64,000 nucleotides of DNA, taken from IMG/VR virus record IMGVR_UViG_3300046517_002304, positions 248,001 to 312,000 of that record. One strand, given 5' to 3'. Below, in pieces: positions 11,113-63,769 of the stretch. The translations under genes were made by a program, and so were the position numbers. The notes beneath the pieces were generated by a model. It saw nothing but the letters and a program-made list of their open reading frames with translations, had not been told where the DNA came from and made no database searches. Position 1 is the first letter of the stretch, and each line of letters starts with the position of its first letter.

Positions 11113-11425
11113 TAGGATTTTTTCCTGGTATTTTTGGGAAAACCCCTTGTGGCGATAAAGGGTATTTCCTGGATTTTTTTGAAATGGCCGAATGCGGAAA
11201 ATGTCCCTGAATGTTTATTAAAATGGCAGGGTGCCGGATGAATATGGAACCTTTAAATACCCCTTATGTTTCTAAAGGGGCGGGGTACCGGGAAAATAAA
11301 AGATGAGGGGAATGAGGATGGCTGTCCTGGTGGCGTAGCCCCCCATCTTACTCAGACCCCCCACATGTTCCGGAAGATAATTTATAGCAGCAAGGTTCTG
11401 CTACCAGTTATCCCTAGAGCATGTC

Positions 11426-11647
11426 CTACGCTGCGGTAGGGATGAACTCCTGATACCCGCTCTGTCTATCCAACGCAACCGCTACCTCTCCCGCACTCAC
11501 CGTCAAGTCCCCATGAACCTTGCCCCCTACCAGCACCCGCTTGGTATCCCGCAGTCCCACACTCCAGTGGTGGCAGCAGGTCAGCCCGCTCTCCCTGTCC
11601 CGCACGTAGACCAGACCATTCGGCAGCAGCTCGGCAGTCAGCATCAT
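11426..11647 (-). CDS. Hypothetical protein
   Basis: SD AGGAG; octamer upstream. Confidence 0.7.
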   Translation of the reverse strand: MMLTAELLPNGLVYVRDRESGLTCCHHWSVGLRDTKRVLVGGKVHGDLTVSAGEVAVALDRQSGYQEFIPTAA

Positions 11648-11668
11648 ACTTGGCTCTCCTTACAACCA

Positions 11669-11899
11669 TTAAAGGATAACTAACTGATCCGTGAACGTGT
11701 TCAGCGTGCCTGTCCCGCCCGATGCCCGGTAAGCCTCCCAGCATCGGGCCGCATAGACGACTTGCCCCAGCGAAACGAATGGCAGCCTCTTGCTGGCTTC
11801 CCGCTGGAACTCAGCCGCCTGCTGCCGATTGAACAGGCGAACTAACTCAACCCCGCCGGGCACCTTACGCAAGGCAAGTTGCGACGTTATCCGCATCAT
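11669..11899 (-). CDS. Hypothetical protein
   Basis: Start at MMRITS with AAGGGG SD. Confidence 0.6.
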   Translation of the reverse strand: MMRITSQLALRKVPGGVELVRLFNRQQAAEFQREASKRLPFVSLGQVVYAARCWEAYRASGGTGTLNTFTDQLVIL

Positions 11900-12108
11900 G
11901 GGCAACCCCCTTAATAATAAACAAACAGGTGAACAGGTGTATAGAAAGGCCCACCCGCGGCGTAGATTGAAACGCACGCGGGGGGCGGTAGCAGCTCTAC
12001 TTCCTCATTCCCTGAATGACCGCGATGACGCCCGCAAAGTAGTAGGGGGTTGCTTCCGTCATGTTACTCTCCTGTAAGAGGTCGGGGATACAGAAGGGTA
12101 GGGATAAC

Positions 12109-12372
12109 TCAGGTCGTAAAGGTTCCGTCCGCGAACGTCTGGAGAATCTGGACTTTCTTATCGTGGTTGCCGTCGTCGGCTTTGCGGTTAACCGTCAGTT
12201 CCGCCAGGGTCGCTTCTCCCGCGTTCTGATAGGCGGGAAGGAATTCCTTTACCCATTGCTTGAAGTGAGTCTCAGCGGCGTGTAGAGCGTGCCCAGGCGT
12301 AGCATCGTTGAAGACGACAATCCCTTGAACAATCTGGCGAACCATTTTGAGGACGACGTAAGAATAAATCAC
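12109..12372 (-). CDS. Hypothetical protein
   Basis: SD AGGAG; stop in octamer. Confidence 0.7.
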   Translation of the reverse strand: MIYSYVVLKMVRQIVQGIVVFNDATPGHALHAAETHFKQWVKEFLPAYQNAGEATLAELTVNRKADDGNHDKKVQILQTFADGTFTT

Positions 12373-12381
12373 GATGACTCC

Positions 12382-12591
12382 TTAGAGGGCGGTATAAACC
12401 CAGCCTGAATCGGGCCGACTATTCCAACGGTCAATCAGCTTCAGGAAATCTTGCCGATTGTAACAGTAAACGGTCTTCTCTCCGTCATGGTTGCCGTTGC
12501 CGTTGTACCGAATCCAGTGGTAGCGAAATTGTCGCATGCCAATATGATCGTTGCGGGAATACCAGACGTTGGCTGACGAATCGTGTTCCAT
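12382..12591 (-). CDS. Hypothetical protein
   Basis: Tightly packed ORF. Confidence 0.65.
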   Translation of the reverse strand: MEHDSSANVWYSRNDHIGMRQFRYHWIRYNGNGNHDGEKTVYCYNRQDFLKLIDRWNSRPDSGWVYTAL

Positions 12592-12593
12592 AA

Positions 12594-12791
12594 CTACGCC
12601 CAGGGACTTGACTTGATACGATTTTCGGCGGCTCGCAAAACGGCTGGCGTGCCAGTAAGACGATGGATAACTTCCTTCGCCTCTGCCTTTGTCATGCCGC
12701 CGATCATTCCGAGAATGCCATCGGGCATGTTCAGCGTTTTGCGGGCAACGCGGAGCTGGTGCTTTTCAGGGATACTTAGTTGTCGTGCCAT
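12594..12791 (-). CDS. Hypothetical protein
   Basis: ATG 10 nt after octamer. Confidence 0.7.
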   Translation of the reverse strand: MARQLSIPEKHQLRVARKTLNMPDGILGMIGGMTKAEAKEVIHRLTGTPAVLRAAENRIKSSPWA

Positions 12792-12801
12792 GCGGGGTAA
12801 T

Positions 12802-12949
12802 GGATAACTGCTCCCCGGCTAGTTATCCATATCTTAGGTACAGGGGAAACTATAAGAGTTAATAATTATAGTATCAGTACTTTAGCTATGGATAACTTAG
12901 AGGATCTCCGGGTAACGAAAACAGGGGGGACTTTCCCCCCTAGTTATCC
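12802..12949. repeat. Long intergenic element copy 1 (octamer pair + 77-bp IR-bounded unit + terminator)
   Basis: AGTTATCCATATCTTAGGTAC...TATGGATAACT then G6/C6 hairpin with A-tract. Confidence 0.8.
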
Positions 12950-12953
12950 CTGA

Positions 12954-13205
12954 TTAGTATTCGTCGAAGAATCCGTAGTCTTCGTCGGTCCCCATTCCGG
13001 CGCTGGTCATGGCCGAATCGTGGTCGCCATCCATATCTTCGCCGGGAATGTGGTCGTCGTCGGTCTGCTCTTCGTCTTCCAGAATTCCGACAGAGAGGAA
13101 CAGGCCAGTGGCAGCGTATGCCCGTACCAGCTTGACCGCTTCCTCTTCCGTGGCGACAACGTGCTCATGGCTGGCATTTTGCGTGCGACAGACGACAACT
13201 GGCAT
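12954..13205 (-). CDS. Hypothetical protein with acidic DGDHDSAMTSAG.GTDEDYG tail
   Basis: SD ACAGGAG before MPVVV. Confidence 0.7.
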   Translation of the reverse strand: MPVVVCRTQNASHEHVVATEEEAVKLVRAYAATGLFLSVGILEDEEQTDDDHIPGEDMDGDHDSAMTSAGMGTDEDYGFFDEY

Positions 13206-13254: not shown

Positions 13255-13467
13255 CTACGATTTGGCGAAACCGGCTCCGAGCGTCGTTTCAAATTCCCCG
13301 GCGGTCTTGCGGGTTTCGTGGTCCCAGATATAGCCGTAATCCATGTTCGGGCGATTCTGGAATTCGGCGAGGATACGACGGGCCTGTTCCATGCTTTCGG
13401 CGGGCAGAAACGAGATTGACGGCTTGCCCGGCGAAATTTTGCGATGGCCCACGACGGTGAGTTTCAT
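13255..13467 (-). CDS. Hypothetical protein
   Basis: Stop in octamer; AAGGA SD. Confidence 0.7.
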   Translation of the reverse strand: MKLTVVGHRKISPGKPSISFLPAESMEQARRILAEFQNRPNMDYGYIWDHETRKTAGEFETTLGAGFAKS

Positions 13468-13519
13468 AATTCGTTATCCTTTCAAAAATCGGGTGAAACT
13501 TACAACCGACTACGGATAA

Positions 13520-13717
13520 CTAACGGCTAATGCTCCCCGCGAGAAATCGCGTAAAGGGGTTGTGTGTCGTTTGCTGGATTTCTTCGAGGTCGGCCTTTGT
13601 TTCAGCGGCGATTCCCGATATGCGGGCATTGTCGGCGGCTGACATTTGATTTTTGTATCGGCGGGCGATTGACGTTACCTGAGTCAATGCCCGCAAGAGG
13701 TCAATCTGATCCCTCAT
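13520..13717 (-). CDS. Hypothetical protein
   Basis: ATGA-coupled; stop in octamer. Confidence 0.65.
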   Translation of the reverse strand: MRDQIDLLRALTQVTSIARRYKNQMSAADNARISGIAAETKADLEEIQQTTHNPFTRFLAGSISR

Positions 13718-15105: not shown

Positions 15106-15345
15106 TTAGACCGCTTCCCCCCGACCGATCAGCCAATACCTATACTGGCCGTTCCGATATTCAATGACTGCGGAGCGGTCAATGTGGCTGGCATGGGTGA
15201 ACGCATGGTCGCGGCAATCGGCGAAACTGAAATCGGCAAGGCTTGGATTGACGACGAAGTAGTCAACGGCGATTGATTTGGGAGGAGCTGGCTTTGGCGG
15301 CGGGGACCATGAGCGGCGGTAGCCGTAATCGGTATATGGGTTCAT
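15106..15345 (-). CDS. Hypothetical protein
   Basis: ATG 10 nt after octamer; stop in octamer. Confidence 0.7.
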   Translation of the reverse strand: MNPYTDYGYRRSWSPPPKPAPPKSIAVDYFVVNPSLADFSFADCRDHAFTHASHIDRSAVIEYRNGQYRYWLIGRGEAV

Positions 15346-15355
15346 GGTTGTTAAT

Positions 15356-15510
15356 GGATAACTGCGGGGTGGGCTAGTTATCCATATCTTAGGTACGGGG
15401 AGAGTTTTGTTGTACTAGGATTTAACTAGTAGGTACCTAAGATATGGATAACTCTGGCGGTACGTGGCGAAAAGAAAAAACGCTCCCGTTTCGGGGAGCG
15501 TTAGTTATCC
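15356..15510. repeat. Long intergenic element copy 2 (perfect 21-bp IR, 15376-15396 / 15433-15453)
   Basis: AGTTATCCATATCTTAGGTAC and exact reverse complement; terminator at 15475-15502. Confidence 0.85.
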
Positions 15511-15521
15511 TTAGCTTTGGT

Positions 15522-17472: not shown

Positions 17473-17850
17473 TTATTCGTTTGAGTAACTCAAATCGTCG
17501 CTTGGCTGAAGTTGATTCCAGATATGCCCGCAATTTTCGCATGATTCACCATGCAACGCGGACTCAGGAATCGGCTCTTGACAGTCGGGACATTCGCCCT
17601 TATCATATTCGTTTCGGACGAGATCAGACGGAACCCAAGTCAGACGTTTGGGGAATGGTTTTTTATCACGGAAGCAAAGGATTCGTAAATCGCCCGATGC
17701 CTGACTTTTTGCAGAGGCAAGCGTAGGTGCCCAGTCCTGCCGATTAGTCCCGACTTTGTAACTCCAAAATGGAACAATGCCAGGCGTAGCAATCGGTTGC
17801 TGCCAGATTGTGCATTCGTAGTTCAGGTGTTTGGCGGTATACTGGAGCAT
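17473..17850 (-). CDS. Protein with C-terminal CxxC-CxxC zinc ribbon
   Basis: CPDC...CENC; ATG 10 nt after octamer. Confidence 0.7.
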   Translation of the reverse strand: MLQYTAKHLNYECTIWQQPIATPGIVPFWSYKVGTNRQDWAPTLASAKSQASGDLRILCFRDKKPFPKRLTWVPSDLVRNEYDKGECPDCQEPIPESALHGESCENCGHIWNQLQPSDDLSYSNE

Positions 17851-17860
17851 ACGATTTAAT

Positions 17861-18003
17861 GGATAACTCATCGCCGCCTAGTTATCCATATCTTAGGTAC
17901 GCAGAGAGTTTTGTTGTACTAGGATTTAACTAGTAGGTACTCTAGCTATGGATAACTAGACCTATCAGCTAGGCCAAAAAAATTGGCCCGGGTTTTCCGG
18001 GCC
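17861..18003. repeat. Long intergenic element copy 3
   Basis: 78-bp unit 17880-17957 near-identical to 15376-15453; terminator hairpin follows. Confidence 0.85.
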
Positions 18004-18282
18004 TTGTCCTATTCACCTTGCAGGTTATCCCCCTGATAAGCGGCGTAGCTCTTCTCATCGTGCCAAGTCAGCTTGACCGCACGGCAGGTCGTGAAATCGT
18101 GGTTCCAGAAAAAATCGTAATAGCGGGGGGTGAGATTTCGGTGTTCCCCGCGAGCAAATTGCTCCGCAGTGAATTCAATCATACCGGTTATCCTTTTAAT
18201 CGGGTGAAACTTACAACCGATTACGGATAACTAGAATGACCCTCCCTAGGTATCACTAGGGAGGGTCGGAGGGACGAACGCA

Positions 18283-21635: not shown

Positions 21636-22217
21636 TCAGTGTCTCTTTGCCTTGGCACGAAGATAGGCGTCTTCCCACGCATACGCCTCTTCTGCCGTGA
21701 CCGTGCCGCCGATTGCATTGAACATTGCATTCAGCTTGCGATTGTATTCAGCAGCATGCCGACGAACAACGGCAGGATTTGCCTCACCGTCGCAATGCAG
21801 AGTCTCGGGTTCAAGTGCCGCATAGCAAGCAACGATTGCCGCCATGATAGCCTTATCAATATTGGATTGCAGAATCGGATGGAAAACCGAATTTGCTGGT
21901 TGAACGCGACCGACCCCGAGCAACTTCATTGCGTCAACCGTCGCAACGTCAGCGGCGGTCAGCGTCACCTTTTCGCGGGGAGTTTCGGTCTTCTGCGAAG
22001 TAACCCGAGCAACGTCTGCCTCTGTTGCGGGAGTAAGCATTTCATAAGGGACAACCCAAATTGACCCTACTTCGCTGCCACGCCCGTACCCGCGTTGCTC
22101 CAATATGCGAACTTTCGCTTTGACGCGGTTACGCTTGAAAATTTTAGCGATAGTCCTTTGACCATTTTCGCGGCCAAAGCTCACCGGCATTCCGTCGTAT
22201 GCTTGTTCGTAATTCAT
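21636..22217 (-). CDS. Hypothetical protein (LEPETLHCDGE motif)
   Basis: ATG 10 nt after octamer; stop in octamer. Confidence 0.75.
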   Translation of the reverse strand: MNYEQAYDGMPVSFGRENGQRTIAKIFKRNRVKAKVRILEQRGYGRGSEVGSIWVVPYEMLTPATEADVARVTSQKTETPREKVTLTAADVATVDAMKLLGVGRVQPANSVFHPILQSNIDKAIMAAIVACYAALEPETLHCDGEANPAVVRRHAAEYNRKLNAMFNAIGGTVTAEEAYAWEDAYLRAKAKRH

Positions 22218-22227
22218 ATTTGCCAAT

Positions 22228-22368
22228 GGATAACTCATCGCCGCCTAGTTATCCATATCTTAGGTACGTAGCAGATATTGTTGTACTAGGATTTTCTAAT
22301 GTTGTACTCTAGTTATGGATAACTGGCCAGGACTACAGGCCAAAAAATTAGCCCCCGTTTAGCCGGGG
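22228..22368. repeat. Long intergenic element copy 4
   Basis: First ~40 bp identical to copy 3; 78-bp unit 22247-22324; terminator. Confidence 0.85.
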
Positions 22369-22600
22369 GAACGCTGACGCTCATTAGCCGCGAGCGACGA
22401 CAGCAAGGTGTAAGGGATAACTCAGTCAAACAAATCCCGCTTTGCCTGATAGCCGTCATCTTCCGGCCCCCAGGTATTTTCGCAGTTGCCGTGTTCGTCA
22501 ATGTAACGAATCACGCCAGTAAGGTCAAGCTGAAGACAACCGCCGTCTTCCATTTCCAACTCTTGCATAATCAGGACTCCTTTAATTGTTAAGGGATAAC

Positions 22601-24197: not shown

Positions 24198-24677
24198 ATG
24201 CAAAAGTTTAACTGCGGGACTTGTGGAAAAGAAGTTTATCGACCGACTTGGAGAATCAAAAAATGTTTAACTGGCATTTTTTACTGTAGCCAGAAATGTT
24301 GCTGTGATGCTAATAACAAAAAAAAGGCGGATCAGGTTAGTGGTATGAGAAAAGGCGAAGTACTAAACCACTGTTCCACGTCCAGTAGGTTCGCAACGAT
24401 ACGGAAAAATGCTAGGCGAACATACCTTGCGTCAGACAAACCTAAGTGCTGCCTAGTATGCGGGTATTCTAAGCATATTGAAATTTGCCATGTTCAGGGG
24501 ATTACAACATTCCCCGATGAGACGAAGTTAATCGTTATCAACGATCTGACAAATCTCGTTGCTTTATGTCCGACCCATCATTGGGAGTTAGACAATAAGC
24601 AGCTTGACGAAGAAATACTCCCGGAAAGATTCGCACTTTCGACCCCCGGGTTAGAAACCCGATGCTCTATCTGCTGA
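24198..24677 (+). CDS. HNH endonuclease with N-terminal Cys-rich zinc finger
   Basis: CLVC...EICHV...NLVALCPTHH; antisense to surrounding genes. Confidence 0.8.
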   Translation: MQKFNCGTCGKEVYRPTWRIKKCLTGIFYCSQKCCCDANNKKKADQVSGMRKGEVLNHCSTSSRFATIRKNARRTYLASDKPKCCLVCGYSKHIEICHVQGITTFPDETKLIVINDLTNLVALCPTHHWELDNKQLDEEILPERFALSTPGLETRCSIC

Positions 24678-24688
24678 GCTACGAGAGC
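24616..24688 (-). tRNA. tRNA-Arg(TCT)
   Basis: Cloverleaf: GCTCTCG/CGGGAGT acceptor, TTTCTAA loop; atypical T-loop TGCGAAT. Confidence 0.85.
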
Positions 24689-24744
24689 AACTGACAGACA
24701 ACAATGGATAACTCAGGAGTTCCTGAGTTATCCTTACCTGAAAT

Positions 24745-26442: not shown

Positions 26443-26525
26443 TGAATACTCCGGTGATTTGTAAGGGGGATTTACATCATGGCGACTGTCGAACCCGCCG
26501 CGATAACCCCCAGATGCAGGACGAT

Positions 26526-26722
26526 GGATAACTAGCTGCCCCCATAGTTATCCATAGCTAAGGTACGGACTATCATTTAGATTCCCCTGCTAGTTATCCA
26601 TAGCTAAGGTACGGAACAATACTAGGATGCCCCCGTTAGTTATCCATAGCTTAGGTCCGGCCGAACATAGCTGGGGCCAGTCGAAATAAAAAATGCCCCT
26701 CAGCCAATCAAGGCTGAGGGGA
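26526..26722. repeat. Three direct repeats TAGTTATCCATAGCT(A/T)AGGT at 46-bp period, plus terminator
   Basis: Octamers at 26546, 26592, 26638. Confidence 0.85.
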
Positions 26723-26801
26723 CTAACTAAGGCGGGACATTATGCCCGCAATCGTGGAGGTCCGCCAATCAGGCGGGCCAGTTGAGTCTAACTATGGATA
26801 A

Positions 26802-27590: not shown

Positions 27591-27639
27591 ACTTGTTATC
27601 CTTTAAAAGTGTGCGGAGTTGATGGAAGTTAAAGGATAA

Positions 27640-45441: not shown

Positions 45442-45450
45442 GATTGTTTC

Positions 45451-45705: not shown

Positions 45706-45725
45706 GATTGTTTTCTAATGGATAA

Positions 45726-46652: not shown

Positions 46653-46653
46653 T

Positions 46654-47282: not shown

Positions 47283-47298
47283 AATTGTTAAAGGATAA

Positions 47299-47493: not shown

Positions 47494-47495
47494 GC

Positions 47496-47744: not shown

Positions 47745-48030
47745 TTTTCTTATTCTTATGTTCGTTGCAGCACTTTGCTGAACAGAATGCGTTTGGATGT
47801 TTTTTCATTTCACCGCAATTAATACAAGGCTTCGCAGGATAAACTGGTTTACTTCTGCCTCCACCGCCATAACCCAGCACTCCCATATAAGGCATACCAA
47901 CTAATGCAGCAGCCAAACTAAGATGCATTCGTCCTACTCTGGACAATGCCGATGAGCGAGTAGGATGAATTTCTACTGTATCGTTTCCAGATGTGATTGT
48001 CTCAACCGTATCAGACAAAGCATGCTCCAT
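47722..48030 (-). CDS. Protein with C-terminal CxxC...FCSxxC finger
   Basis: CINC...FCSAKC. Confidence 0.6.
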   Translation of the reverse strand: MEHALSDTVETITSGNDTVEIHPTRSSALSRVGRMHLSLAAALVGMPYMGVLGYGGGGRSKPVYPAKPCINCGEMKKHPNAFCSAKCCNEHKNKKNAITPTN

Positions 48031-48205
48031 TAAGTTTGGGGTTTATAACTTATAATGGATAACTAAGGCTCAAATCCAGTTCCGTCCATAACATCACAAG
48101 CCGCCGCATAAATTTCAGCCATGCGTTCTGCCAGCGTTTCAGGCGATTGATTAGGATCGGACGCACCTTGAATTCTATACAGTGCCATGAGAATTTCGTA
48201 GCTTG

Positions 48206-48775
48206 TCATGGTCTTCCTTTCAGCTTGTAATTCGGAAGTGATTGCTTATCAACATACTTACACGTATCAATAGCAATCACCGAATCAGGACCGTAAAAAC
48301 AAGATTCCATTTCGTTTGCGTCTTCCTCTGTTTCTGGCATCGCCATATTGTCAAACATCCACTGAATAACTTCATAAAAATTTCCTGTGACGGGCTGAGT
48401 AACATGCACAGTTAATTTTTTAACAGGAGCAAGTCTGGTATGCTGCGTCTTAAGAAGATACAATAAATTTAGGTCATTGATAGATTGAATAGATTGTCTT
48501 GACGACAGCATCCCATCTTGCCAGTTTGTTTTCTTGCTACTAAGCCAATCATACTTGCACAGAACAATAGTATGAGGCTCTGTGATAAAATGAGCGTATG
48601 ATGGTTGTCTGACCATTTCGCAGATGCGAGCAACGTCAGACTGGCGAGCGAAAAATGCTCTGTTATATCGCATAAAGTTAAACATATTTCGCAATCCGTG
48701 AGTAGCAAGGATTGCGAAGTTGAACCGATTAAGCGGTCCCTGATCTAAGTATGTTGGTTCGGCGAGTGTAATCAT
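48206..48775 (-). CDS. Hypothetical protein
   Basis: 189 aa; ATGA-coupled. Confidence 0.75.
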   Translation of the reverse strand: MITLAEPTYLDQGPLNRFNFAILATHGLRNMFNFMRYNRAFFARQSDVARICEMVRQPSYAHFITEPHTIVLCKYDWLSSKKTNWQDGMLSSRQSIQSINDLNLLYLLKTQHTRLAPVKKLTVHVTQPVTGNFYEVIQWMFDNMAMPETEEDANEMESCFYGPDSVIAIDTCKYVDKQSLPNYKLKGRP

Positions 48776-49128
48776 GGGAGCGGAGCTACGTCGGCAGAGT
48801 TACAGGCAATGGTATGAACCAACTCCAAAGGAATATCTCCTCTCCCTAATAGACATGAAACTTTAATGATATGCTGGCCTTCATCGTAGCCGATGATTTC
48901 GCCATGCCCCTCAACGCCGCTTACGAAAAAATTAACTTTATCACCGATGGTTGCTTGTGTATCATCGGTGATATCGTGTGCCGTAATAACTTCGGGAAGA
49001 TATTCAGTTAAGGTTCTAGCCGATACTTCAAGCATCGGCCTATGTTTAACCTTGCCGTCTTCGCTAAAAGCAGAATGCAACTGGCGAAGCAAACTGATCG
49101 GAATGAGGATTTGTTCGTCGTTATTCAT
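48772..49128 (-). CDS. Hypothetical protein
   Basis: ATG 10 nt after octamer. Confidence 0.75.
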   Translation of the reverse strand: MNNDEQILIPISLLRQLHSAFSEDGKVKHRPMLEVSARTLTEYLPEVITAHDITDDTQATIGDKVNFFVSGVEGHGEIIGYDEGQHIIKVSCLLGRGDIPLELVHTIACNSADVAPLP

Positions 49129-49332
49129 GATTGATTACGGATAACTACTTTCGCAAAAAGAGAGTAGAGCCTGTCTGAACGTATGTTCCGTTTTCAGATT
49201 TAAAATAAAGCCACATACCATCTTTGCGTATCGCCAGCAACCCATTAGACAAATGGCGAAAACTATTTACGTGGTAACGATGAAGGATGCCTGAGACGCT
49301 GGTCATGGTGTCGCCTTATTGTTACTAGAACA

Positions 49333-49512
49333 TCAACCAATCGGTTCAACTTCCAGCACCTCAACCGTGCGGTCAAGGGTATTTCTCCGACACTTTGCGA
49401 GATTGTCGCTTCCCGCTTCACGAACTTCTTCCTCTACGTCGTCAATGCAATCAGCTTCAATTTCATAGACTGCCCGCATATCTTGACGAATGATGACACG
49501 AAACAAAGGCAT
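49333..49512 (-). CDS. Hypothetical protein
   Basis: SD GGAG before MPLFRV. Confidence 0.6.
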   Translation of the reverse strand: MPLFRVIIRQDMRAVYEIEADCIDDVEEEVREAGSDNLAKCRRNTLDRTVEVLEVEPIG

Positions 49513-49543
49513 GTGATTTCTCCAGTTGATTATTAAGGGATAA

Positions 49544-49756
49544 CTAGCGGGGCCTGTTTCGCATACGTGATGCAGAGGCAAGCCGCTTGATTCGGTTGCG
49601 ACGGAATCTTTCGTTCTTAGAAATGGGACTACGCGCCCGCAACCATCCCGACTTACCGTAGGGATTACTCTGCAAATGCGGTTGACCGCACATGACGCGA
49701 GCAATCGTGTCGGCATAGTATCGGGTGCCGCACATTTCAATCATATCTGGCATCAT
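49544..49756 (-). CDS. Small basic protein
   Basis: Octamer-bounded ORF. Confidence 0.6.
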   Translation of the reverse strand: MMPDMIEMCGTRYYADTIARVMCGQPHLQSNPYGKSGWLRARSPISKNERFRRNRIKRLASASRMRNRPR

Positions 49757-49796
49757 GCGTATGTTCCTTTATGAGTGTTGATTTGTTAAAGGATAA

Positions 49797-50816
49797 CTAG
49801 CGGGGGGTCAACGTCGTTGTCTGGAAATTCGTGATGTTATCGTTTTCCGCCTTGCCTTCAAAATCCATCGGCACAATGTTCGGATCAGTAGGTTGAACTA
49901 CAGGCCGATACATGGAAAGGAATTTCGTTATGACTGCCTTAGTCACGATCTTTAACTGCTGCGGCGTATAAGTCGCCACAACCGCCGGTGGAGGCATCTT
50001 AGCGTTAGAGTCATACAATCCGCCATCCCCGAGAACTCCGTCAAGTCCCGGAGCGATGATCTGGAAACCTTGCGGCTTGAATGGCGTAGGCGTTTTGAAT
50101 GGGTCAATGTTGGGAAGCATGTAAGGGATGACCGATCCATCGGGAACGCTCACGCCAAACATTGCTTGCATGGCGGCTTTTGAGTTTGAATCGAAGTTCC
50201 GCTTAGATACATAAAAATCATTGTAGTTATAAACAGAGCCGTCATACGAACTATAATAAACAATCGGATCGGTATCTTCGGTGCCGCTCATTGTGTATTC
50301 GCGGAACCCATCGCCGTCATAGTCGCGTAGCCGACTCGGCATAAATTCGTAGATGATCTGCTGGCGATTTGTGGATACGGCGAACGGATTCGTTATCATT
50401 GAGGCGAACCCGCTTGGAGTCTTGCCGTTGTCAAATGTGCCGCCCAAAAAGAACACGAGACATTCAGCACCGTCAAGAAATGTCGGCTGGTCAATCGTTC
50501 CATTCCTGTTAATATCGTTATTAACAGTGAAATCAAACATCGGCCACATTTGAGTAATCTGGTATTTTGCCGATGGATAGGATGCCCAATCAGAAGCATT
50601 TTCGCAGAGCGTAATCCCGCTTGGAGGCTGGACACCATAGCGGATTTTGAAAATTGAAATTGCATTGTCAAGCTGAGCAACTTCAATGCGAGATGCGGCG
50701 ATCATCGCTCTTATCCGCACGCCGTTGACAGCGGGGACAAGGAGGCCCATGAGAACAAGAATTACGCTAATCACAATGATTAGCTCAACCACAGTAAACG
50801 CCTTGCGATTCTTCAT
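49797..50816 (-). CDS. Prepilin-type N-terminal cleavage/methylation domain protein (type IV pilin/pseudopilin-like)
   Basis: RKA^FTVVELIIVISVILVLMGLL; AECLVFFLGG; FQIIAPGLDG; DNITNF. Confidence 0.85.
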   Translation of the reverse strand: MKNRKAFTVVELIIVISVILVLMGLLVPAVNGVRIRAMIAASRIEVAQLDNAISIFKIRYGVQPPSGITLCENASDWASYPSAKYQITQMWPMFDFTVNNDINRNGTIDQPTFLDGAECLVFFLGGTFDNGKTPSGFASMITNPFAVSTNRQQIIYEFMPSRLRDYDGDGFREYTMSGTEDTDPIVYYSSYDGSVYNYNDFYVSKRNFDSNSKAAMQAMFGVSVPDGSVIPYMLPNIDPFKTPTPFKPQGFQIIAPGLDGVLGDGGLYDSNAKMPPPAVVATYTPQQLKIVTKAVITKFLSMYRPVVQPTDPNIVPMDFEGKAENDNITNFQTTTLTPR

Positions 50817-50862
50817 AGCGATCTTTCTGTAAGTGAGGTTCAAGATGATTGTTAAAGGATAA

Positions 50863-51243
50863 CTAAGAGAGGATATGCTTGATATCAGAAATGGTTTCCA
50901 AAACGAAAACCATTGTCGGAAAAATCAAAGGGTCTACCACAAATATAAACATGCTATAGAGCATGATGCAAAATTGAAATATGTTTAGTCCCTTCATGGT
51001 TTTGCAGGCAGTCTCTACCCGTTTCCTGTTGTAGACGATGGCCATTGCCGCGATGACAATAAAGGACAATTTAATTTTTACGCCGATCAAACCCATTATG
51101 CCGTTATTGTTGATGTGTGCTTCGGCGAGAGGATTGGCTTCGTAGAACGTATTCCCTTTGTTAATGACCGTCGCAACAGTCATAACAACGTCCATTGATT
51201 GAAGGAACAGGAACAGCAAGAAATGTTTGACGAGCGTTTTCAT
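50863..51243 (-). CDS. DUF5658-like membrane protein
   Basis: D...T...EANPL...K with several TM segments. Confidence 0.6.
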   Translation of the reverse strand: MKTLVKHFLLFLFLQSMDVVMTVATVINKGNTFYEANPLAEAHINNNGIMGLIGVKIKLSFIVIAAMAIVYNRKRVETACKTMKGLNIFQFCIMLYSMFIFVVDPLIFPTMVFVLETISDIKHILS

Positions 51244-51263
51244 ATTTGATAACGGATAACTAA

Positions 51264-51470
51264 TTAGAAGTTTTCAGGAAGCCATTCTCCTAAATCTTTA
51301 ATCATTTTGATAAATGGTGCAATTTTTTCCTCTAGCTGTTGCGGCGTAATGACGCCAGCGGCAGCATTAGATACATTGCCCTCAAGGCCCATGAGGATTG
51401 CAGTGAGTTGCATTTTAGGCGTAGGCTGACGCCAGAGTGGATTAAGTGTTTTCATAAATTCCACATCCAT
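51264..51470 (-). CDS. Hypothetical protein
   Basis: ORF in cluster. Confidence 0.55.
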   Translation of the reverse strand: MDVEFMKTLNPLWRQPTPKMQLTAILMGLEGNVSNAAAGVITPQQLEEKIAPFIKMIKDLGEWLPENF

Positions 51471-51908
51471 CGGCCATGAATTGTTATGTAATTAATCCAG
51501 TCGTGTTCATTCCAATTTCCCGTATACACTGGCGGGGGAGAAAATAGATATTTGCCAGCTCTGTATAGCTGGACTTTATCATCGTAAGATAGGACTACCA
51601 TTTTTGAATGATATCTGTAAGTCGCCAGTAGGCGAACAAAAGAGCGAATGGGAGGAGAAACATTTCAACCTCAATCCATGTTTCGCAAAAGACTTGATTA
51701 ATATCTTTGAGTAGTTCTTTCATTTCAAAAACCTGCCAGCATCAAATCGCGGGTTGTTGAAAAGTAGAAATAAAGTTCGTGGTCTAAGTATGCCAACACA
51801 TATTGACACACTTCACCACTAGGAACATCAAACGTATCGTTGTAGCTGTTCCAGATTTGAGGATTGCTTTTAGGCATTGGATTTTCTTTCTTATCTGGTA
51901 AGGGATAA

Positions 51909-52148
51909 CTACTTACTCCATCCTCTTTCCCACGCTGACGCTTCATCTGCATAAAGCATTCGGTCGTAAATATCACTTTTCTTATAAGGATTTTTGAATT
52001 GCTCTCCACTCATTTTAGTAGAGTAGGCGTCTTCCTCAATCTTAACCAACACTGATTTTCTCGCTTGCATAAACCTTGCGTAATCGGAAAATGCGAACCC
52101 CGCAAATCCAAAAACTAACACGCCAGCGATTATGATTGACGGTCGCAT
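51909..52148 (-). CDS. Membrane-anchored Rmf-like protein
   Basis: TM + NPY...WERGW. Confidence 0.55.
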   Translation of the reverse strand: MRPSIIIAGVLVFGFAGFAFSDYARFMQARKSVLVKIEEDAYSTKMSGEQFKNPYKKSDIYDRMLYADEASAWERGWSK

Positions 52149-52288
52149 ATTTTATAAGGGATAACTAAGGTTGCCCAATCCGTCCTCATTGAATTTTCAG
52201 TCAGTCGACTAAACTTACTAATTCTCCGAATGTTGATTGTCAGATCTGGGAGTTTTATGACCTGATCTTCACCCTTGGCAATCCGTCG

Positions 52289-52561
52289 TTATTCTTCGTC
52301 GGAAATGGTTTTGTTGTTGGCCGTGATTTCAAGTCCGGGAAACGGCGATCCGTCTCTGCCGATTTTCTGGACCGTTTTGAATTTCGCTGGAGCAAAATTG
52401 CTGTTCATATAATTATTAAATGCCGTGTTGTTTCGGCATCGCATACGAACGTGCTTTGCAAACTTGGTGAGGAACCAGAGTTGTTCAGCAGTAGCATCCT
52501 TCACCGAAAATCCAAAAGCCGATTCAAAAGCGGTTGTGAAATCTTTGCCAGTAAAGTGCAT
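52289..52561 (-). CDS. Hypothetical protein
   Basis: AAGGA SD before MHFTGK. Confidence 0.65.
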   Translation of the reverse strand: MHFTGKDFTTAFESAFGFSVKDATAEQLWFLTKFAKHVRMRCRNNTAFNNYMNSNFAPAKFKTVQKIGRDGSPFPGLEITANNKTISDEE

Positions 52562-52602
52562 GGTTCGGTTCCTTTTGTTAATTGACAAATGAAAAGGGAT
52601 AA

Positions 52603-52809
52603 CTATTCGCCGAACATTCCGATGTCGTGGGCAAGACAATCCTTCAAATCAGAAGAAGTATCCGTAAGTTGCACGCCGTTCCCCGACCAAACTTGCACAT
52701 TTAATTTTCCATTAACAATCGTTGTTCTGAGGATACAGCAGAGCCGTTTCCCGTTCACAACTCGGAGAATAGATTGTTCGTCAGTCAATGTTTGTGCGAT
52801 GATGTTCAT
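52603..52809 (-). CDS. Hypothetical protein
   Basis: ATG 10 nt after octamer; stop in octamer. Confidence 0.65.
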   Translation of the reverse strand: MNIIAQTLTDEQSILRVVNGKRLCCILRTTIVNGKLNVQVWSGNGVQLTDTSSDLKDCLAHDIGMFGE

Positions 52810-52829
52810 AGTTTCTAATGGATAACTAA

Positions 52830-52863
52830 AAACTGCCGTGTGGGAATTCCCACACGGCAGTTT
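52830..52863. terminator. Perfect 34-bp palindrome, probable terminator of ParB-like gene
   Basis: AAACTGCCGTGTGGGAA|TTCCCACACGGCAGTTT. Confidence 0.7.
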
Positions 52864-61302: not shown

Positions 61303-61345
61303 ACTGAGTTATTAATATTACTTAGAACGATAACTAAATAATTAT

Positions 61346-62146
61346 ATGCGTTTTTCCGAATTCTTAGATGAAATGGCGTTCAGCACTGGAGTAGTGCCAA
61401 ATGAACACAAACAGCTATTGCAATTTGATGACACCGATAAACAATTATATCAATGGGCTAAAGCAAAGTTTAATGCTGTTGCTGCGGCTAAAGTTATATT
61501 AGCCAGATATGGATATTTAAGGCCAGACCTACAGCAAAAGGCGATAGAATCTGGCGTTTACTTTAAAGACATAAATGAAAATGTACCAGGCAGTCCAGGA
61601 ATTCTAGTTTTTAAAAATAAAGAGTTTCCGATACAGTCTAATATCAGAGAATTAAGAAACAGAATCAAAGACCAAATACCGCTGCTTACTAGATGGGGAG
61701 GCCGCGCACCTTCAGCAAAGACAGGCATAGATTATGATAGGTTGAGTAAGGGCTTCCAGCTCAACTATCACGCAAAAGCCGATTATTCTAATAATGAGTT
61801 ATGGCAATCAATTATTAAGGCCGATGGGTCAAGGTGTAATTCTCAAGAAGAGTTCAAACAAGAATTTACAAACCCGCACGCTCTTAATTTTAATATGAAA
61901 TTAGGGAGTACTCACGTTGACCACGATCAAATCATAAGGTTGATTAATGATCGGATCAAAAGTAAATTTGGGTCAGTCGCTCCCCCGGGGGATATTAAGA
62001 AAGTATTAGATTATTTATACCTTAACCTCGGCAAGATCGCCAGCAATAGCGGTACAATTCAGTCATCTATCGGAGCCGTTTTTAGGGACTGGGAATATAA
62101 AAATTCTGGGGACAAAGGCAGCTACACGCCTAACTACATCCCATAA
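61346..62146 (+). CDS. Putative late/virion-internal protein
   Basis: TAAATA 5 nt upstream; N-terminal MRFSEFLDE. Confidence 0.7.
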   Translation: MRFSEFLDEMAFSTGVVPNEHKQLLQFDDTDKQLYQWAKAKFNAVAAAKVILARYGYLRPDLQQKAIESGVYFKDINENVPGSPGILVFKNKEFPIQSNIRELRNRIKDQIPLLTRWGGRAPSAKTGIDYDRLSKGFQLNYHAKADYSNNELWQSIIKADGSRCNSQEEFKQEFTNPHALNFNMKLGSTHVDHDQIIRLINDRIKSKFGSVAPPGDIKKVLDYLYLNLGKIASNSGTIQSSIGAVFRDWEYKNSGDKGSYTPNYIP

Positions 62147-62298
62147 GCGTAATCGTTCAGTCCACCGATTTCTACTCCACGCTTGCCCCTAATAAGCATC
62201 GCTTTCCGCTCTCTCCGCGAAAGGACGGGAACGTAAACTAAAATCCACTCGCCCTTATGGGCTGGTTTTCGCTTTTTGCGTTTTATGATTGGCACGAT

Positions 62299-62556
62299 TC
62301 ACCATCCCCACAGAACATTATGGATTAAATATATAGCCAATGCCGGCCCTTCCATTATTAAAAAGAAAAGGCTAATGGTTAGACACCAAGCGTACATGTC
62401 TTCATTAATATAATTCAGAGTATTTTCAAACTTATACTTATAATACCATGCCGTAAGAGCAAATAGTGCCGCCACAAAGGCAAATACTATCATTGCTGCA
62501 ACTGCTAGTGGCATTGTGGGCGCTGTTCTTCTGCTTGTTTGATCCAAGTAGAGCAA
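62299..62556 (-). CDS. Membrane protein
   Basis: Two TM segments. Confidence 0.55.
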   Translation of the reverse strand: MLYLDQTSRRTAPTMPLAVAAMIVFAFVAALFALTAWYYKYKFENTLNYINEDMYAWCLTISLFFLIMEGPALAIYLIHNVLWGW

Positions 62557-62665
62557 TAGCCGATGCTATCATCATCATGCCAGCATGACCGTACTTTGCC
62601 AATCCAGTACATCACAAGGATATCACTGGATTGTTTGGCAACAGCTTCGCAATATTGCCAAAAAC

Positions 62666-62965
62666 TCACTTAACTTCCTCTACCAAGAGGATTTCTTCGT
62701 CCGGCTGCTCTTCAGTAATTCGATCTCTTGCATGTTTCTTAGACACACACTGGAGAACAAAATACTTGCCGGATTTTGTTTCAATTCGCCAAGGGGCAGA
62801 CTTAGAAAGCCCTTCAATGTTAGCCTTCTTGGGTTCCGCTTCAACGGCGACAGGAGCCGCCACCTCAACTGCTTTCTTCTTCATTGTTTTCCTTACATGA
62901 ACTTCGGTGCCATTTTCGGTTGTCTGGCTACCAGATGCGGTTTCAGAACCTTTTTTCTTCATCAT
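62666..62965 (-). CDS. Hypothetical protein
   Basis: ATG 10 nt after octamer. Confidence 0.7.
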   Translation of the reverse strand: MMKKKGSETASGSQTTENGTEVHVRKTMKKKAVEVAAPVAVEAEPKKANIEGLSKSAPWRIETKSGKYFVLQCVSKKHARDRITEEQPDEEILLVEEVK

Positions 62966-63207
62966 GTCTTTCTATGGATAACTAAGGTTTGATTTTAAAA
63001 ACAATCATTCGGCTAATCCGCAAGTATCCCGGTGTTGCCACCCTGGTTTCACAGAGCTTAACCGAACAATTGTCTTATGTCTTTTTTGGCTTCGGCCACT
63101 TCAGATCTGCGGAATTCACAACCCCTTTACCCCGCCATTTTCCCTGAAGTCGGTCCCACAGTCGCCACTTGTCTCCATCCCGACGCATAATAAATCTGAT
63201 TTTCATC

Positions 63208-63519
63208 TTACGCCTTCTTCAATCCAGCGCCGGGGGTTTTCTTCTTGGCCGAAAAATGAATTCGGTTACTGTTGTCGTAATGCCATTCGAATCTGGAATC
63301 GCCGCGAACCAGACCCTTCATAGCCCACACCAAATCTTTATCGTCGCAAGAAATGGAAACCATTGAACCGCTGATGAGCGTCTTCAAGTGTTCCGCTGCT
63401 TTGCTTGCGGCAGCATTCTGAGTCGCTTCACGACGACGCTCAAATCCGTCTCGCTTACGCTTCTCTTTATTCCAATCTCCGAGGGAAAACCCTTCAGCGA
63501 AGTTGCCCTTGCCAGCCAT
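63208..63519 (-). CDS. Hypothetical basic protein
   Basis: AAGGA SD. Confidence 0.7.
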   Translation of the reverse strand: MAGKGNFAEGFSLGDWNKEKRKRDGFERRREATQNAAASKAAEHLKTLISGSMVSISCDDKDLVWAMKGLVRGDSRFEWHYDNSNRIHFSAKKKTPGAGLKKA

Positions 63520-63571
63520 TTTAATTTCCTTTAAAAAAGGTTATTGAATTGTTATGAACTAGTATGGATAA

Positions 63572-63769
63572 CTAAATTTCGATAATGTCTACAACAACGT
63601 CTTTTTCATCTAATATCAAAACTAAACATTCGGCATGTTTCTTATATTCATACAAATCTTTGTTATTCAAATTATCATTAGGTTTTTTGCGAACAGTTAG
63701 ATAACCCATTTTAACTAAATACTTTTCGGCTTTACCTACCTTCATTCCGATTGCGTTTGTTGTTTTCAT
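63572..63769 (-). CDS. Hypothetical protein
   Basis: Coupled; stop in octamer. Confidence 0.65.
   Translation of the reverse strand: MKTTNAIGMKVGKAEKYLVKMGYLTVRKKPNDNLNNKDLYEYKKHAECLVLILDEKDVVVDIIEI

What the first reader, a model, noticed from the sequence alone, without database searches (positions are those of the whole stretch)
11406..63573. One polar octamer (AGTTATCC) divides ~52 kb into about 110 small gene units
Seen: GGATAACT occurs about 110 times on + (hand count), almost always at gene junctions and oriented with transcription. Only one copy was noticed in 1-11.3 kb (2605, inside a gene). It explains the recurrent 'SYP(L)' in the ORF track. About 50 genes end with their stop inside the motif (TAG-TTATCC, TGA-GTTATCC or TAA-GTTATCC), e.g. 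genes ending at 12109, 14250, 21636, 35535, 49797, 60092. The region reads as [motif]-gene-[motif]-gene. Inference: either a phage-specific promoter before nearly every gene, or a shared crossover site making these genes exchangeable cassettes, conceptually like integron cassettes or T4-type PeSL modules but with only 8 bp. Caveat: any ORF running into a TAG-containing motif in frame stops there, so genome compaction alone explains part of the stop overlap.
Basis: partly seen in the sequence, partly recalled or inferred. Interest (0 to 1): 0.95.

Follow-up and report, generated by a model that had tools for sequence, protein, structure and literature searches.

The report
Private promoter-like motif of a megaphage
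A 511-kb uncultivated phage marks the start of about 150 small transcription units with one invariant 10-13-base signal, most likely its own promoter; the predicted transcription start often falls on the ATG itself, which would give mRNAs with no leader.

Summary
GGATAACT occurs 133 times (1.7 expected): 114 in gene orientation and 19 inverted. The true core is tAGTTATCCnTwa, with 112 exact copies against 6 one-mismatch copies. It delimits units of 1-4 genes, not single genes. The window is positions 248-312 kb of a 511-kb IMG/VR phage contig. The motif fills a block of about 150 kb (259.4-409.2 kb; about 154 forward copies) and is absent from the sampled flanks. No other contig found carries it.

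Best reading: a phage-specific core promoter.
- Every strong terminator on the gene strand is followed by a copy.
- One copy precedes a tRNA.
- No upstream element is conserved.
- A pyrimidine-purine step lies exactly 10 nt after the octamer, even where no ATG is there (42/52; p=5e-17).
- In 35 junctions that purine is the A of an ATG without a Shine-Dalgarno sequence, implying leaderless mRNAs.

A second subclass of 22 copies, in both orientations, flanks terminators and lacks the start signature. One copy splits a UvrD-type helicase gene in two, as T4-type PeSL cassettes do. No polymerase gene was found in the 195 kb examined. Cassette exchange could not be tested, because all assemblies are identical and there are no close relatives.

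The parts
11406..63573 (-). Motif-bearing part of the window. 113 copies of AGTTATCC in gene orientation (112 with the full AGTTATCCNT core) plus 19 inverted copies. They bound transcription units of 1-4 small genes.
29946..52834 (-). Densest sub-region, with one copy per ~0.45 kb. The first ATG of the unit is typically exactly 10 nt after the octamer, without a Shine-Dalgarno sequence. No strong intrinsic terminators.
39270..39292 (-). Typical junction: stop TAG overlapping the motif, 10-nt spacer, then the ATG of the next gene (TAG-TTATCC-N10-ATG).
12780..12960 (-). Composite module: inverted copy, terminator hairpin, forward TAGCT-type copy, ~35 nt, inverted copy, 11 nt, promoter-type copy, 10 nt, ATG.
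15335..15520 (-). Composite terminator/motif module (four copies in alternating orientation around a bidirectional hairpin at 15479-15502).
17840..18020 (-). Composite terminator/motif module, 88% identical to the 15.4-kb module over 104 nt.
22207..22385 (-). Composite terminator/motif module, 83% identical to the 17.9-kb module over 150 nt.
26505..26730 (-). Terminator, followed by three tandem inverted TAGCT-type copies (46-nt period), then a promoter-type copy.
27591..27642 (-). Motif-bearing junction that splits a UvrD-type helicase gene. The stop TAG lies in the motif. A 12-bp hairpin pairs the motif with the Shine-Dalgarno region. The ATG of the second half follows.
27640..28605 (-). Helicase N-terminal half (321 aa; UvrD-helicase/AAA_19). 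Aligns to residues 30-304 of an intact 549-aa homologue.
26802..27590 (-). Helicase C-terminal half (262 aa; UvrD_C). Aligns to residues 311-545 of the same homologue.
24615..24733 (-). Perfect 12-bp palindromic pair of copies (24706-24733), followed 16 nt later by tRNA-Arg (24615-24689). This shows the motif upstream of a non-coding gene.
11384..11413 (-). Left boundary of the block: last inverted copy (11406-11413) abutting a terminator-like hairpin. No functional-looking copies occur further left for at least 30 kb.
13462..13525 (-). Leader in which the motif pairs with GGATAAC just before the ATG. Sister leaders lie at 18177-18236 and 16078-16137.
52820..52863 (-). 34-bp palindromic terminator with T-run, immediately followed by the motif and, 10 nt later, an ATG. 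There is no room for another promoter.
2605..2612 (-). Stray octamer inside a gene, lacking the +9 T. Probably a chance match and not part of the system.

Best explanation
Proposal. tAGTTATCCnTwa is the core promoter of one transcription class of this megaphage. It would be read by a phage-directed transcription machinery: a phage-encoded RNA polymerase, or a phage specificity factor on the host enzyme. The reader protein is not identified.

Inferred geometry. The conserved block occupies about -19 to -7. It is followed by 4-5 unconstrained bases, then T(-2) Y(-1) R(+1), so transcription would start 10 nt after the octamer.

Consequences.
- Where the unit's first ATG sits at that position (35 junctions in the window, 44 of the 154 forward sites sampled across the 259.4-409.2 kb block), the mRNA is leaderless. 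That would explain the missing Shine-Dalgarno sequence and the exclusive use of ATG.
- Elsewhere the leader is 3 nt (ATG at +13), or 20-50 nt with a normal Shine-Dalgarno sequence.
- Later genes of a unit are translated by stop/start coupling.
- Because the signal begins with TAG, upstream genes usually end in it, giving 21-nt gene junctions.

Second subclass. 22 copies of the form AGTTATCC-n-TAGCT.. occur in both orientations, clustered around terminators and back-to-back with promoter copies. They lack the start signature. They are more likely binding-only sites (regulatory, insulating or decoy) for the same protein.

Shown versus inferred. Shown: the anatomy, statistics and distribution. 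Inferred: promoter function, start site and leaderless translation.
For: (1) Enrichment and all-or-none conservation. 133 copies against 1.7 expected. 112 exact 10-mers against 6 one-mismatch copies. No conserved upstream element.

(2) All promoter-type copies are in gene orientation. 0 of 16 inverted copies carry the Y17R18 signature.

(3) All eight strong intrinsic terminators on the gene strand in 11-31 kb that are separate from the motif are followed within 70 nt by a copy; the ninth strong hairpin (24706-24733) is itself a palindromic pair of copies. Several abut it, with an ATG 10 nt later, leaving no room for another promoter.

(4) A copy lies 16 nt upstream of tRNA-Arg, and copies precede ORF-free stretches, so it is not a translation signal.

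(5) A pyrimidine-purine step lies exactly 10 nt after the octamer in 42/52 sites that have no ATG nearby (background 25%, p=4.6e-17, sharp peak at that offset only). It is present in 35/35 ATG+10 sites and in 24/42 sites outside the window.

(6) ATG+10 genes have a Shine-Dalgarno-like sequence in 3/30 cases, against 30/38 for 20-100-nt leaders. All ATG+10 starts are ATG.

(7) The motif is confined to one ~150-kb same-strand block (259.4-409.2 kb) of ORFan and auxiliary genes. It is absent from 229-259 kb and 409-424 kb, although those genes are largely on the same strand. This is the pattern of a temporal class.

(8) The motif is private to this genome in the IMG/VR and metagenome scans, as phage-polymerase promoters are.

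(9) Precedent: jumbo phages with their own polymerases have phage-specific, highly conserved ~10-nt motifs centred near -10 upstream of early operons (PMC7598289).
Against: - No transcript data exist, so the start site is inferred from sequence only.
- No RNA polymerase or sigma gene was found among called genes in 229-424 kb (38% of the genome). A regex scan for a DxDGD-type catalytic motif returned two matches, in a 375-codon open frame (the pilin-like protein) and a 169-codon one, neither RNA-polymerase-like.
- Four leaders pair the motif with the region just before the ATG (z = -2.2 to -4.5). This only makes sense if the motif is also transcribed, either by read-through or from a start further upstream than I infer.
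- 19 inverted copies point antisense or into terminators, which is odd for promoters.
- The Y/R step could equally mark an RNA cleavage site.
- The motif is less AT-rich than the described jumbo-phage early promoters.
Confidence: 0.6

Rival explanations
1. RNA punctuation. Long polycistronic transcripts are cut by a sequence-specific endoribonuclease that recognises AGUUAUCCNU and cleaves 10 nt downstream, or within the motif. This would release short mRNAs with little or no leader. Alternatively the motif is the RNA binding site of a translational regulator.
For: - The motif is transcribed at least in read-through RNA. Four leaders have selected complementarity to it, which could mask it.
- Stops sit at or before the motif in 104/112 sites, so upstream cistrons would stay intact after a cut.
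- There are no terminators in 31-51 kb.
- The Y/R step could be a cleavage site.
Against: - Copies directly abut efficient-looking terminators, where little RNA would arrive.
- Inverted copies keep the extended consensus on the non-coding strand.
- The arms of the inverted pairs are conserved as sequence, without compensatory changes.
- No other promoter candidates are seen for 35 kb.
- One ORF runs past the putative cut (21618-21331).
Confidence: 0.12
2. The motif is the operator or activator site of a DNA-binding regulator that recruits or blocks the host polymerase, rather than the polymerase recognition element itself.
For: - Back-to-back pairs GGATAACT-N11/12-AGTTATCC look like sites for a dimer.
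- A 22-copy subclass occurs in both orientations and lacks the start signature.
- Two ORFs hit PHROG transcriptional-regulator families.
Against: - With an ATG 10 nt after the motif there is no room for a separate -10 element.
- No sigma-70-like hexamers accompany the copies. Promoter-like hits are at or below shuffle expectation in 31-51 kb (31 found against 38 expected).
- Most copies are single and strictly polar.
Confidence: 0.1
3. The primary role is recombination. The motif and its short flanks would be crossover points that make the ORFans exchangeable cassettes (a minimal PeSL-like or integron-like system). This may well be a secondary consequence of the promoter repeats.
For: - A motif-bearing junction splits a helicase gene exactly between homologous residues 304 and 311. 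PeSL-like sequences sit similarly between g43A and g43B in Aeromonas phages (PMC2839356).
- Every internal DNA repeat in 11.3-64 kb contains the motif apart from two palindromic terminators and one 29-nt tandem duplication; the motif-containing repeats are 23-150 bp at 83-100% identity.
- Near-identical leaders precede dissimilar genes.
- A GC-rich sub-block (12-29 kb) is embedded in lower-GC DNA.
Against: - No variation exists among seven assemblies of the phage, so no breakpoint can be seen.
- No integrase or recombinase hit was found in the window ORFs scanned (larger ORFs of 1-11.4 kb; the 121 ORFs of 60 aa or more in 11.4-64 kb).
- A single polar 10-13-mer is not a typical recombinase site.
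- The fixed distance to start codons and the Y/R step point to an expression signal.
Confidence: 0.05
4. A translation signal: a tether for terminating ribosomes (termination-reinitiation), or a Shine-Dalgarno substitute pairing with rRNA. GGAUAACU occurs in 16S rRNA of E. coli and Bacillus from my memory; this was not checked here.
For: - The stop is in the motif and the ATG is 10 nt later, without a Shine-Dalgarno sequence, at ~35-44 junctions.
Against: - Copies precede a tRNA and ORF-free stretches, and follow terminators where no ribosome arrives.
- Many genes in the block lack the motif.
- Long-leader copies carry normal Shine-Dalgarno sequences.
- The Y/R step is present without an ATG.
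Confidence: 0.03
5. A polar DNA-metabolism signal: a Chi/KOPS-like orienting sequence, a T5-type nick site, a primase or packaging signal, or DnaA boxes.
For: - Strong strand polarity over 150 kb.
- The motif contains TTATCC, the first six bases of the DnaA box.
Against: - The position is locked to stop and start codons and terminators.
- It is absent from flanking same-strand DNA.
- Only two copies continue with AC as a DnaA box would.
- A density of 1 per 0.4 kb in an ORFan region is unlike any such signal.
Confidence: 0.02

Closest known systems
Early promoters of jumbo phages that carry their own multisubunit RNA polymerases (phiKZ, AR9 and relatives)
   Same: A phage-private, highly conserved ~10-nt motif lies upstream of early operons of small genes. 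It has no -35 element and is centred near -10 of the start (PMC7598289). Here the conserved block would span -19 to -7.
   Different: - Copy number and density are far higher (about 154 forward copies; 1 per 0.4 kb at peak).
- The motif is not purely AT-rich (it contains CC).
- Starts coincide with ATG.
- No beta/beta'-like genes were seen in the 38% of the genome examined.
T4 late promoter TATAAATA (gp55/gp33 with the sliding clamp) (own knowledge)
   Same: A single 8-bp element at about -10 suffices. It contains a stop triplet and often overlaps the end of the upstream gene.
   Different: - Different sequence.
- T4 late mRNAs have leaders with Shine-Dalgarno sequences.
- T4 has tens of copies, not ~150.
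- No gp55 or gp33 homologue was identified here.
T7-family single-subunit polymerase promoters and the yeast mitochondrial nonanucleotide promoter (own knowledge)
   Same: Near-invariant promoter unique to the phage. All-or-none conservation. Orientation is strictly with transcription.
   Different: - T7-type conservation runs through -1 to +6. Here -6 to -3 is free and conservation ends at -7, a geometry closer to sigma-type -10 elements.
- No single-subunit polymerase gene was found in the sampled DNA.
PeSL (promoter-early stem-loop) mobile regulatory cassettes of T4-type phages
   Same: Repeated composite units: stop codon, terminator stem-loop, early promoter, start codon. They sit upstream of ORFans in hyperplastic regions. 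PeSL-like sequences lie between the two cistrons of a split essential gene (PMC2839356; PMC4122927). The 12-27 kb modules and the split helicase here match this picture.
   Different: - PeSL promoters are sigma-70 consensus; this motif is not.
- Most copies here (31-64 kb and beyond) have no stem-loop.
- Recombination and mini-circles were shown for PeSLs and are untested here.
Mimivirus AAAATTGA early promoter octamer (own knowledge)
   Same: One octamer lies upstream of a large fraction of genes of a giant virus. It is oriented with transcription and contains a stop triplet.
   Different: - Eukaryotic-virus polymerase.
- Variable distance to the ATG.
- Degenerate variants are common, whereas here variants are almost absent.
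Integron attC cassettes
   Same: Only the picture of many small genes separated by a recurrent site.
   Different: - No integrase hit in the window ORFs scanned.
- No 57-141-bp imperfect palindromes.
- The genes here carry their own expression signal instead of being promoterless.

Membership tests
Phage-specific promoter class (jumbo-phage early-promoter type) | Genome-private, highly conserved ~10-nt motif upstream of operons, in the orientation of transcription, without a -35 element | tested here: met
   133 copies against 1.7 expected. 112 exact against 6 one-mismatch. No upstream conservation. No other contig with multiple copies.
Phage-specific promoter class (jumbo-phage early-promoter type) | Transcripts start at a fixed short distance downstream (motif centred near -10) | tested here: inconclusive
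   There are no RNA data. Indirectly, a Y-R step lies exactly 10 nt after the octamer in 42/52 sites without an ATG (p=4.6e-17) and in 35/35 ATG+10 sites.
Phage-specific promoter class (jumbo-phage early-promoter type) | The genome encodes its own RNA polymerase or specificity factor | tested here: inconclusive
   No polymerase or sigma Pfam hit among called genes in contig positions 229-424 kb. A regex scan for a DxDGD-type motif returned two matches in ORFs that do not look like polymerases. 62% of the genome could not be fetched.
Phage-specific promoter class (jumbo-phage early-promoter type) | AT-rich motif | tested here: inconclusive
   8 of the 12 specified positions are A/T, but two invariant C are present.
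T7-like single-subunit polymerase promoter | Conservation continuous from about -17 through the start to +6 | tested here: not met
   Positions equivalent to -6 to -3, and those beyond +2, are not conserved.
PeSL regulatory cassettes | Composite of a terminator stem-loop and an early promoter, repeated upstream of ORFans in a plastic region | tested here: met
   Met for ~8 modules in 12-29 kb. Copies in 31-64 kb lack stem-loops.
PeSL regulatory cassettes | The promoter part is a sigma-70 consensus | tested here: not met
   No -35/-10 hexamers accompany the motif. Sigma-70-like hits are not enriched.
PeSL regulatory cassettes | Indel or replacement breakpoints between relatives fall at the elements; mini-circles occur | not testable with these tools
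   Seven assemblies are 100% identical. The nearest homologues are 32-35% identical. No reads are available.
Integron | An IntI integrase with attI, and cassettes ending in attC imperfect palindromes | tested here: not met
   No integrase or recombinase family among the 10 larger ORFs (three of them in 1-11.4 kb), seven ORFs of the 4-11 kb array or the 121 ORFs of 60 aa or more in 11.4-64 kb. The site is a single polar 10-13-mer.
Chi/KOPS-type polar octamers | Polarity follows replication and position is independent of gene boundaries | tested here: not met
   Position is locked to stops, starts and terminators. The motif is absent from adjacent same-strand DNA.
DnaA boxes | TTATCCACA-type 9-mer | tested here: not met
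   The base after CC-N is T in 112/113 copies. Only two copies continue with AC.

The most novel reading that the evidence does not exclude
The 13-base signal is a complete, self-contained gene junction: stop codon, polymerase recognition site and leaderless start within 21 nt. It would be read by an unidentified polymerase or specificity factor with nine invariant contacts. The same short repeats, together with the longer terminator-motif modules, would act as mobile regulatory cassettes that capture ORFans and can split essential genes, as with the helicase. On this reading a 150-kb quarter of a megaphage genome would be an array of autonomous, shufflable, leaderless expression units.
Probability: 0.2. 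Interest if true: 0.8.

Novelty: new variant of a known kind. Interest (0 to 1): 0.55.

Why it matters
If the reading is right, it gives a ready-made transcription map for a quarter of an uncultivated 511-kb phage: about 150 units with predicted start sites. It would be one of the densest and most invariant promoter sets I know of, with many predicted leaderless mRNAs, in a phage with no close relatives in the collections searched. The motif is also a handle for finding the polymerase or factor that reads it, by DNA pull-down or co-variation, and a candidate orthogonal promoter/polymerase pair. The split helicase and the PeSL-like modules make this a place to test whether regulatory repeats drive ORFan turnover in huge phages. 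If it is only a promoter consensus, it is an ordinary kind of feature in an extreme form.

Tried and rejected
- Alternative genetic code. Allowing read-through of any one stop does not merge the small ORFs, so the code is standard.
- DNA similarity to 50,697 GenBank phages: none.
- Rfam: only three tRNAs.
- Searches for other genomes with the motif. Two IMG/VR scans and one metagenome scan found only chance single hits outside the parent contig.
- Relatives by protein. The helicase has one relative at 32% identity in IMG/VR. The ParB-like protein has one at 35% in 5.8 billion proteins. No comparative test was possible.
- Strain variation. Contigs from JGI samples 3300046517, 3300047312, 3300046780 and 3300046792 and from three Logan runs are identical to the window except for one mismatch.
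- Hunt for a polymerase. Nine look-ups, seven of them stepping outward from the window, covered contig positions 229-424 kb. Pfam, PHROG and PDB searches of the larger ORFs, including a 771-aa ORFan, found no polymerase. A regex scan for a DxDGD-type catalytic motif returned two matches, neither RNA-polymerase-like.
- Sigma-70 reading of the motif or its surroundings. No register fits TTGACA/TATAAT, and with an ATG at +10 a separate -10 element cannot fit (inspection).
- MotA-box-like activator site at -30. Rejected for the same spacing reason.
- Hairpin function of the inverted pairs. The arms differ without compensation, and the 8-bp/11-nt-loop hairpin is not more stable than shuffles (z=-0.6), except for the perfect 12-bp pair before tRNA-Arg.
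- Duplicated cassettes. There are no DNA-level duplicates of coding sequence. Paralogue families exist but are old.
- Pairing with 16S rRNA was considered only from memory and was set aside, because copies precede non-coding genes and follow terminators.

Full report
**1. The observation**

GGATAACT occurs 133 times in the 64-kb window, against 1.67 expected from dinucleotide-preserving shuffles with a maximum of 5. 114 copies are on the + strand and 19 on the - strand. Nearly all genes from 2.7 kb onward lie on the minus strand, so in gene orientation the common form is AGTTATCC.

The motif is longer than an octamer. The base two positions after it is T in 112 of 113 copies. The next is A or T, then mostly A. 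The base before it is T in 85 of 113. The working consensus is tAGTTATCCnTwa.

Conservation is all-or-none. There are 112 exact AGTTATCCNT in gene orientation against six with one mismatch, and several of those six are probably chance. The lone copy at 2605 lacks the T and lies inside a gene, so it is probably a chance match.

In my rough gene map 62 genes end in the motif (51 TAG, 8 TGA, 3 TAA), and 104 of 112 sites carry a stop triplet at its first bases. T at -1 is also preferred where no gene ends (33/50), so it is partly a motif position. Of the 28 sites without T at -1, 19 have T at -2 and so form TGA or TAA.

Two corrections are needed:
- The stretches between motifs are units of one to four genes, with later genes overlapping by ATGA-type junctions. 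Median spacing is 375 bp.

**2. Where the window comes from and how far the motif goes**

An exact 23-mer from a repeated module hit only IMGVR_UViG_3300046517_002304, a 511,233-bp viral contig. The helicase locus fixes the window at contig positions 248,001-312,000, on the same strand.

There is no DNA similarity to GenBank phages. The genetic code is standard.

I pieced together contig positions 229-424 kb, with two small gaps, from pattern scans and from steps along identical Logan/JGI assemblies.
- The motif begins sharply at 259.4 kb (window 11,406) and ends at 409.2 kb.
- There are about 154 forward copies. Density falls from one per 0.4 kb (260-300 kb) to one per 2-3 kb (332-409 kb).
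- There are none in 229-259 kb or 409-424 kb, although those genes are largely on the same strand.

Outside the window the consensus is tTAGTTATCCATAag.

No other contig in IMG/VR or in the sampled metagenome hits carries more than chance copies. The phage is an orphan. Its helicase has one IMG/VR relative at 32% identity. Its ParB-like protein has one at 35% among 5.8 billion proteins. Seven assemblies from other samples are identical, apart from one mismatch.

**3. Anatomy**

Three kinds of junction occur.

(a) ATG at +10. In 30-52 kb the first ATG of the unit is exactly 10 nt after the octamer. This holds for 35 sites in the window and 44 of the 154 forward sites sampled across the 259.4-409.2 kb block. 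A second peak lies at 13 nt. These genes have Shine-Dalgarno-like sequences in 3 of 30 cases, and all start with ATG. There are no strong terminators in this sub-region.

(b) Long leaders. In 12-29 kb, which is GC-richer (50-52%), leaders are 20-50 nt. They carry Shine-Dalgarno sequences in 30 of 38 cases.

(c) Composite modules. In the same sub-region nine strong intrinsic-terminator-like hairpins lie on the gene strand. One (24706-24733) is itself a palindromic pair of copies; each of the other eight is followed within 70 nt by a copy, often abutting the T-run. About eight of these sites are composite modules repeated at 83-93% identity. Their order is: terminator, forward copy, ~35 nt, inverted copy, 11-12 nt, forward copy, 10 nt, ATG. 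Sometimes a further inverted copy sits just before the terminator.

Other points:
- A perfect palindromic pair precedes tRNA-Arg by 16 nt.
- Several copies precede ORF-free stretches.
- Proteins in the block are mostly ORFans.

**4. A start-site signature**

I took the forward copies with no ATG within 16 nt and not of the TAGCT type (52 sites). Of these, 42 have a pyrimidine at offset 17 and a purine at offset 18, counted from the A of AGTTATCC. That position is exactly 10 nt after the octamer.
- Background is 25%, p = 4.6e-17.
- The peak is confined to that offset.
- In the ATG+10 class the purine is the A of the ATG (35/35).
- In the ATG+13 class the sequence reads ..tcAtcATG, with the same step.
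- Outside the window 24 of 42 sites have it.

A pyrimidine(-1)/purine(+1) step at a fixed distance from a conserved block, independent of the coding start, is what a transcription start looks like. The conserved block then spans about -19 to -7. Positions -6 to -3 are free. This geometry resembles -10-type elements read by sigma-like factors or jumbo-phage polymerases more than it resembles T7-type promoters. That comparison is inference.

None of the 16 inverted copies and none of the six forward TAGCT-type copies has the step. These 22 copies share AGTTATCC-n-TAGCT/TATCT-TAGGTAC and cluster around terminators. I read them as binding-only sites for the same protein. That is inference.

**5. 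The split helicase**

ORFs 27640-28605 and 26802-27590 are the N- and C-terminal halves of a UvrD-type helicase. An intact 549-aa homologue exists in another viral contig (L043:7914-9563). The halves align to its residues 30-304 and 311-545.

The 52 nt between them consist of TAG in the motif, a leader and the ATG. The motif pairs with the Shine-Dalgarno region in a 12-bp hairpin (-12.1 kcal/mol, z = -4.5). Three other leaders have the same design.

So the motif is at least sometimes transcribed, presumably in read-through RNA. Such hairpins would then tie translation of the downstream cistron to the upstream one. PeSL-like sequences between the two cistrons of split g43 in Aeromonas phages are a published parallel (PMC2839356).

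**6. Interpretation**

The best-supported reading is a phage-specific core promoter. The grounds are:
- strict polarity of the start-signature class;
- terminator-then-motif architecture;
- a copy before a tRNA;
- no room for any other promoter where the ATG is 10 nt away;
- confinement to one 150-kb block, as for a temporal class;
- privacy to this genome;
- the published rule that jumbo phages with their own polymerases have private ~10-nt motifs centred near -10 upstream of early operons (PMC7598289).

Leaderless mRNAs follow if the start site is right.

Weak points:
- There are no RNA data.
- No polymerase or sigma gene was found in the 38% of the genome I could read.
- The leader hairpins and the inverted copies are not fully explained.

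Rivals:
- RNA punctuation by a sequence-specific endonuclease fits the stop placement and the hairpins. It does not fit the copies abutting terminators, nor the conserved inverted copies.
- A regulator site is a variant of the promoter reading.
- A translation signal is excluded by the tRNA and the ORF-free units.
- Polar DNA-metabolism signals and DnaA boxes do not fit the locking to gene boundaries.
- Cassette exchange as the primary function is unsupported and untestable here. As a by-product of repeated regulatory modules it is plausible by analogy with PeSLs.

**7. Novelty**

Phage-private promoter consensus sequences are a known kind of feature. This one is unusual in several ways:
- copy number and density;
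- near-absolute invariance;
- the predicted coincidence of transcription and translation starts;
- a second non-initiating subclass around terminators;
- a gene split by the element;
- its setting in an orphan 511-kb phage.

I class it as a new variant of a known kind, of moderate interest.

Noticed in passing
window 4166-11074 (-): Tandem array of about 25 back-to-back ~90-aa ORFs. At least 15 are detectable paralogues, and many start with the same MKAEV-type N-terminus. GC is 36%. There is no motif and no Pfam hit. The array sits immediately downstream of the motif block.
   Followed up: partly
window 26802-28605 (-): UvrD-type helicase encoded as two cistrons split exactly at a motif-bearing junction. 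An intact 549-aa homologue exists in IMGVR_UViG_3300047509_000221.
   Followed up: yes
window 12000-29000: Sub-block with GC of 50-52%, against 36-45% on either side. It also differs in having terminators, long leaders with Shine-Dalgarno sequences, and all the inverted copies. It may be of separate origin.
   Followed up: partly
window 11469-63969 (two ORFs, not pinpointed); L289:1649-2110; L285:1-257; L288:6551-7297: Translation-related genes in the motif block: two ribosome-modulation-factor-like ORFs, a ribosome recycling factor, a PTH2 peptidyl-tRNA hydrolase and a methionine aminopeptidase. Three tRNAs lie in the window (Met, Arg, Leu).
   Followed up: no
L285:3057-3812, L286:3718-4617, L288:16017-16556, L290:16861-18237: RNA repair set: two RNA ligases, Tpt1-like 2'-phosphotransferase and RtcB. 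NAD salvage genes (NAMPT, PRTase, NADAR) and an Apyc1-like metallo-beta-lactamase-fold protein (a possible anti-defence gene) are also present.
   Followed up: no
window 44059-44092 and 52830-52863: Two perfect 34-bp palindromes acting as terminator-like hairpins. Contigs from other samples break at the first one.
   Followed up: partly
window 33177-33763, 24960-25685, 28600-29600: Stretches with several motif copies but no ORF of 38 aa or more. They are candidates for small RNAs transcribed from the motif. 29220-29277 is a perfect 29-nt tandem duplication.
   Followed up: no
L173:310-2625 (-) = contig ~332.8-335.1 kb: 771-aa ORF inside the motif block with no Pfam, PHROG or PDB sequence match. 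It is the largest unexplained protein near the feature.
   Followed up: partly
L291:1-351 (contig ~423.5-423.8 kb); L288:15141-15509 and 18626-19954: TnpB/Cas12f-like gene fragment just beyond the right end of the block. HNH and LAGLIDADG endonuclease genes lie inside it.
   Followed up: no
window 49797-50843 (-): 339-348-aa protein with a prepilin-type N-terminal methylation motif (type IV pilin-like), encoded by the phage.
   Followed up: no
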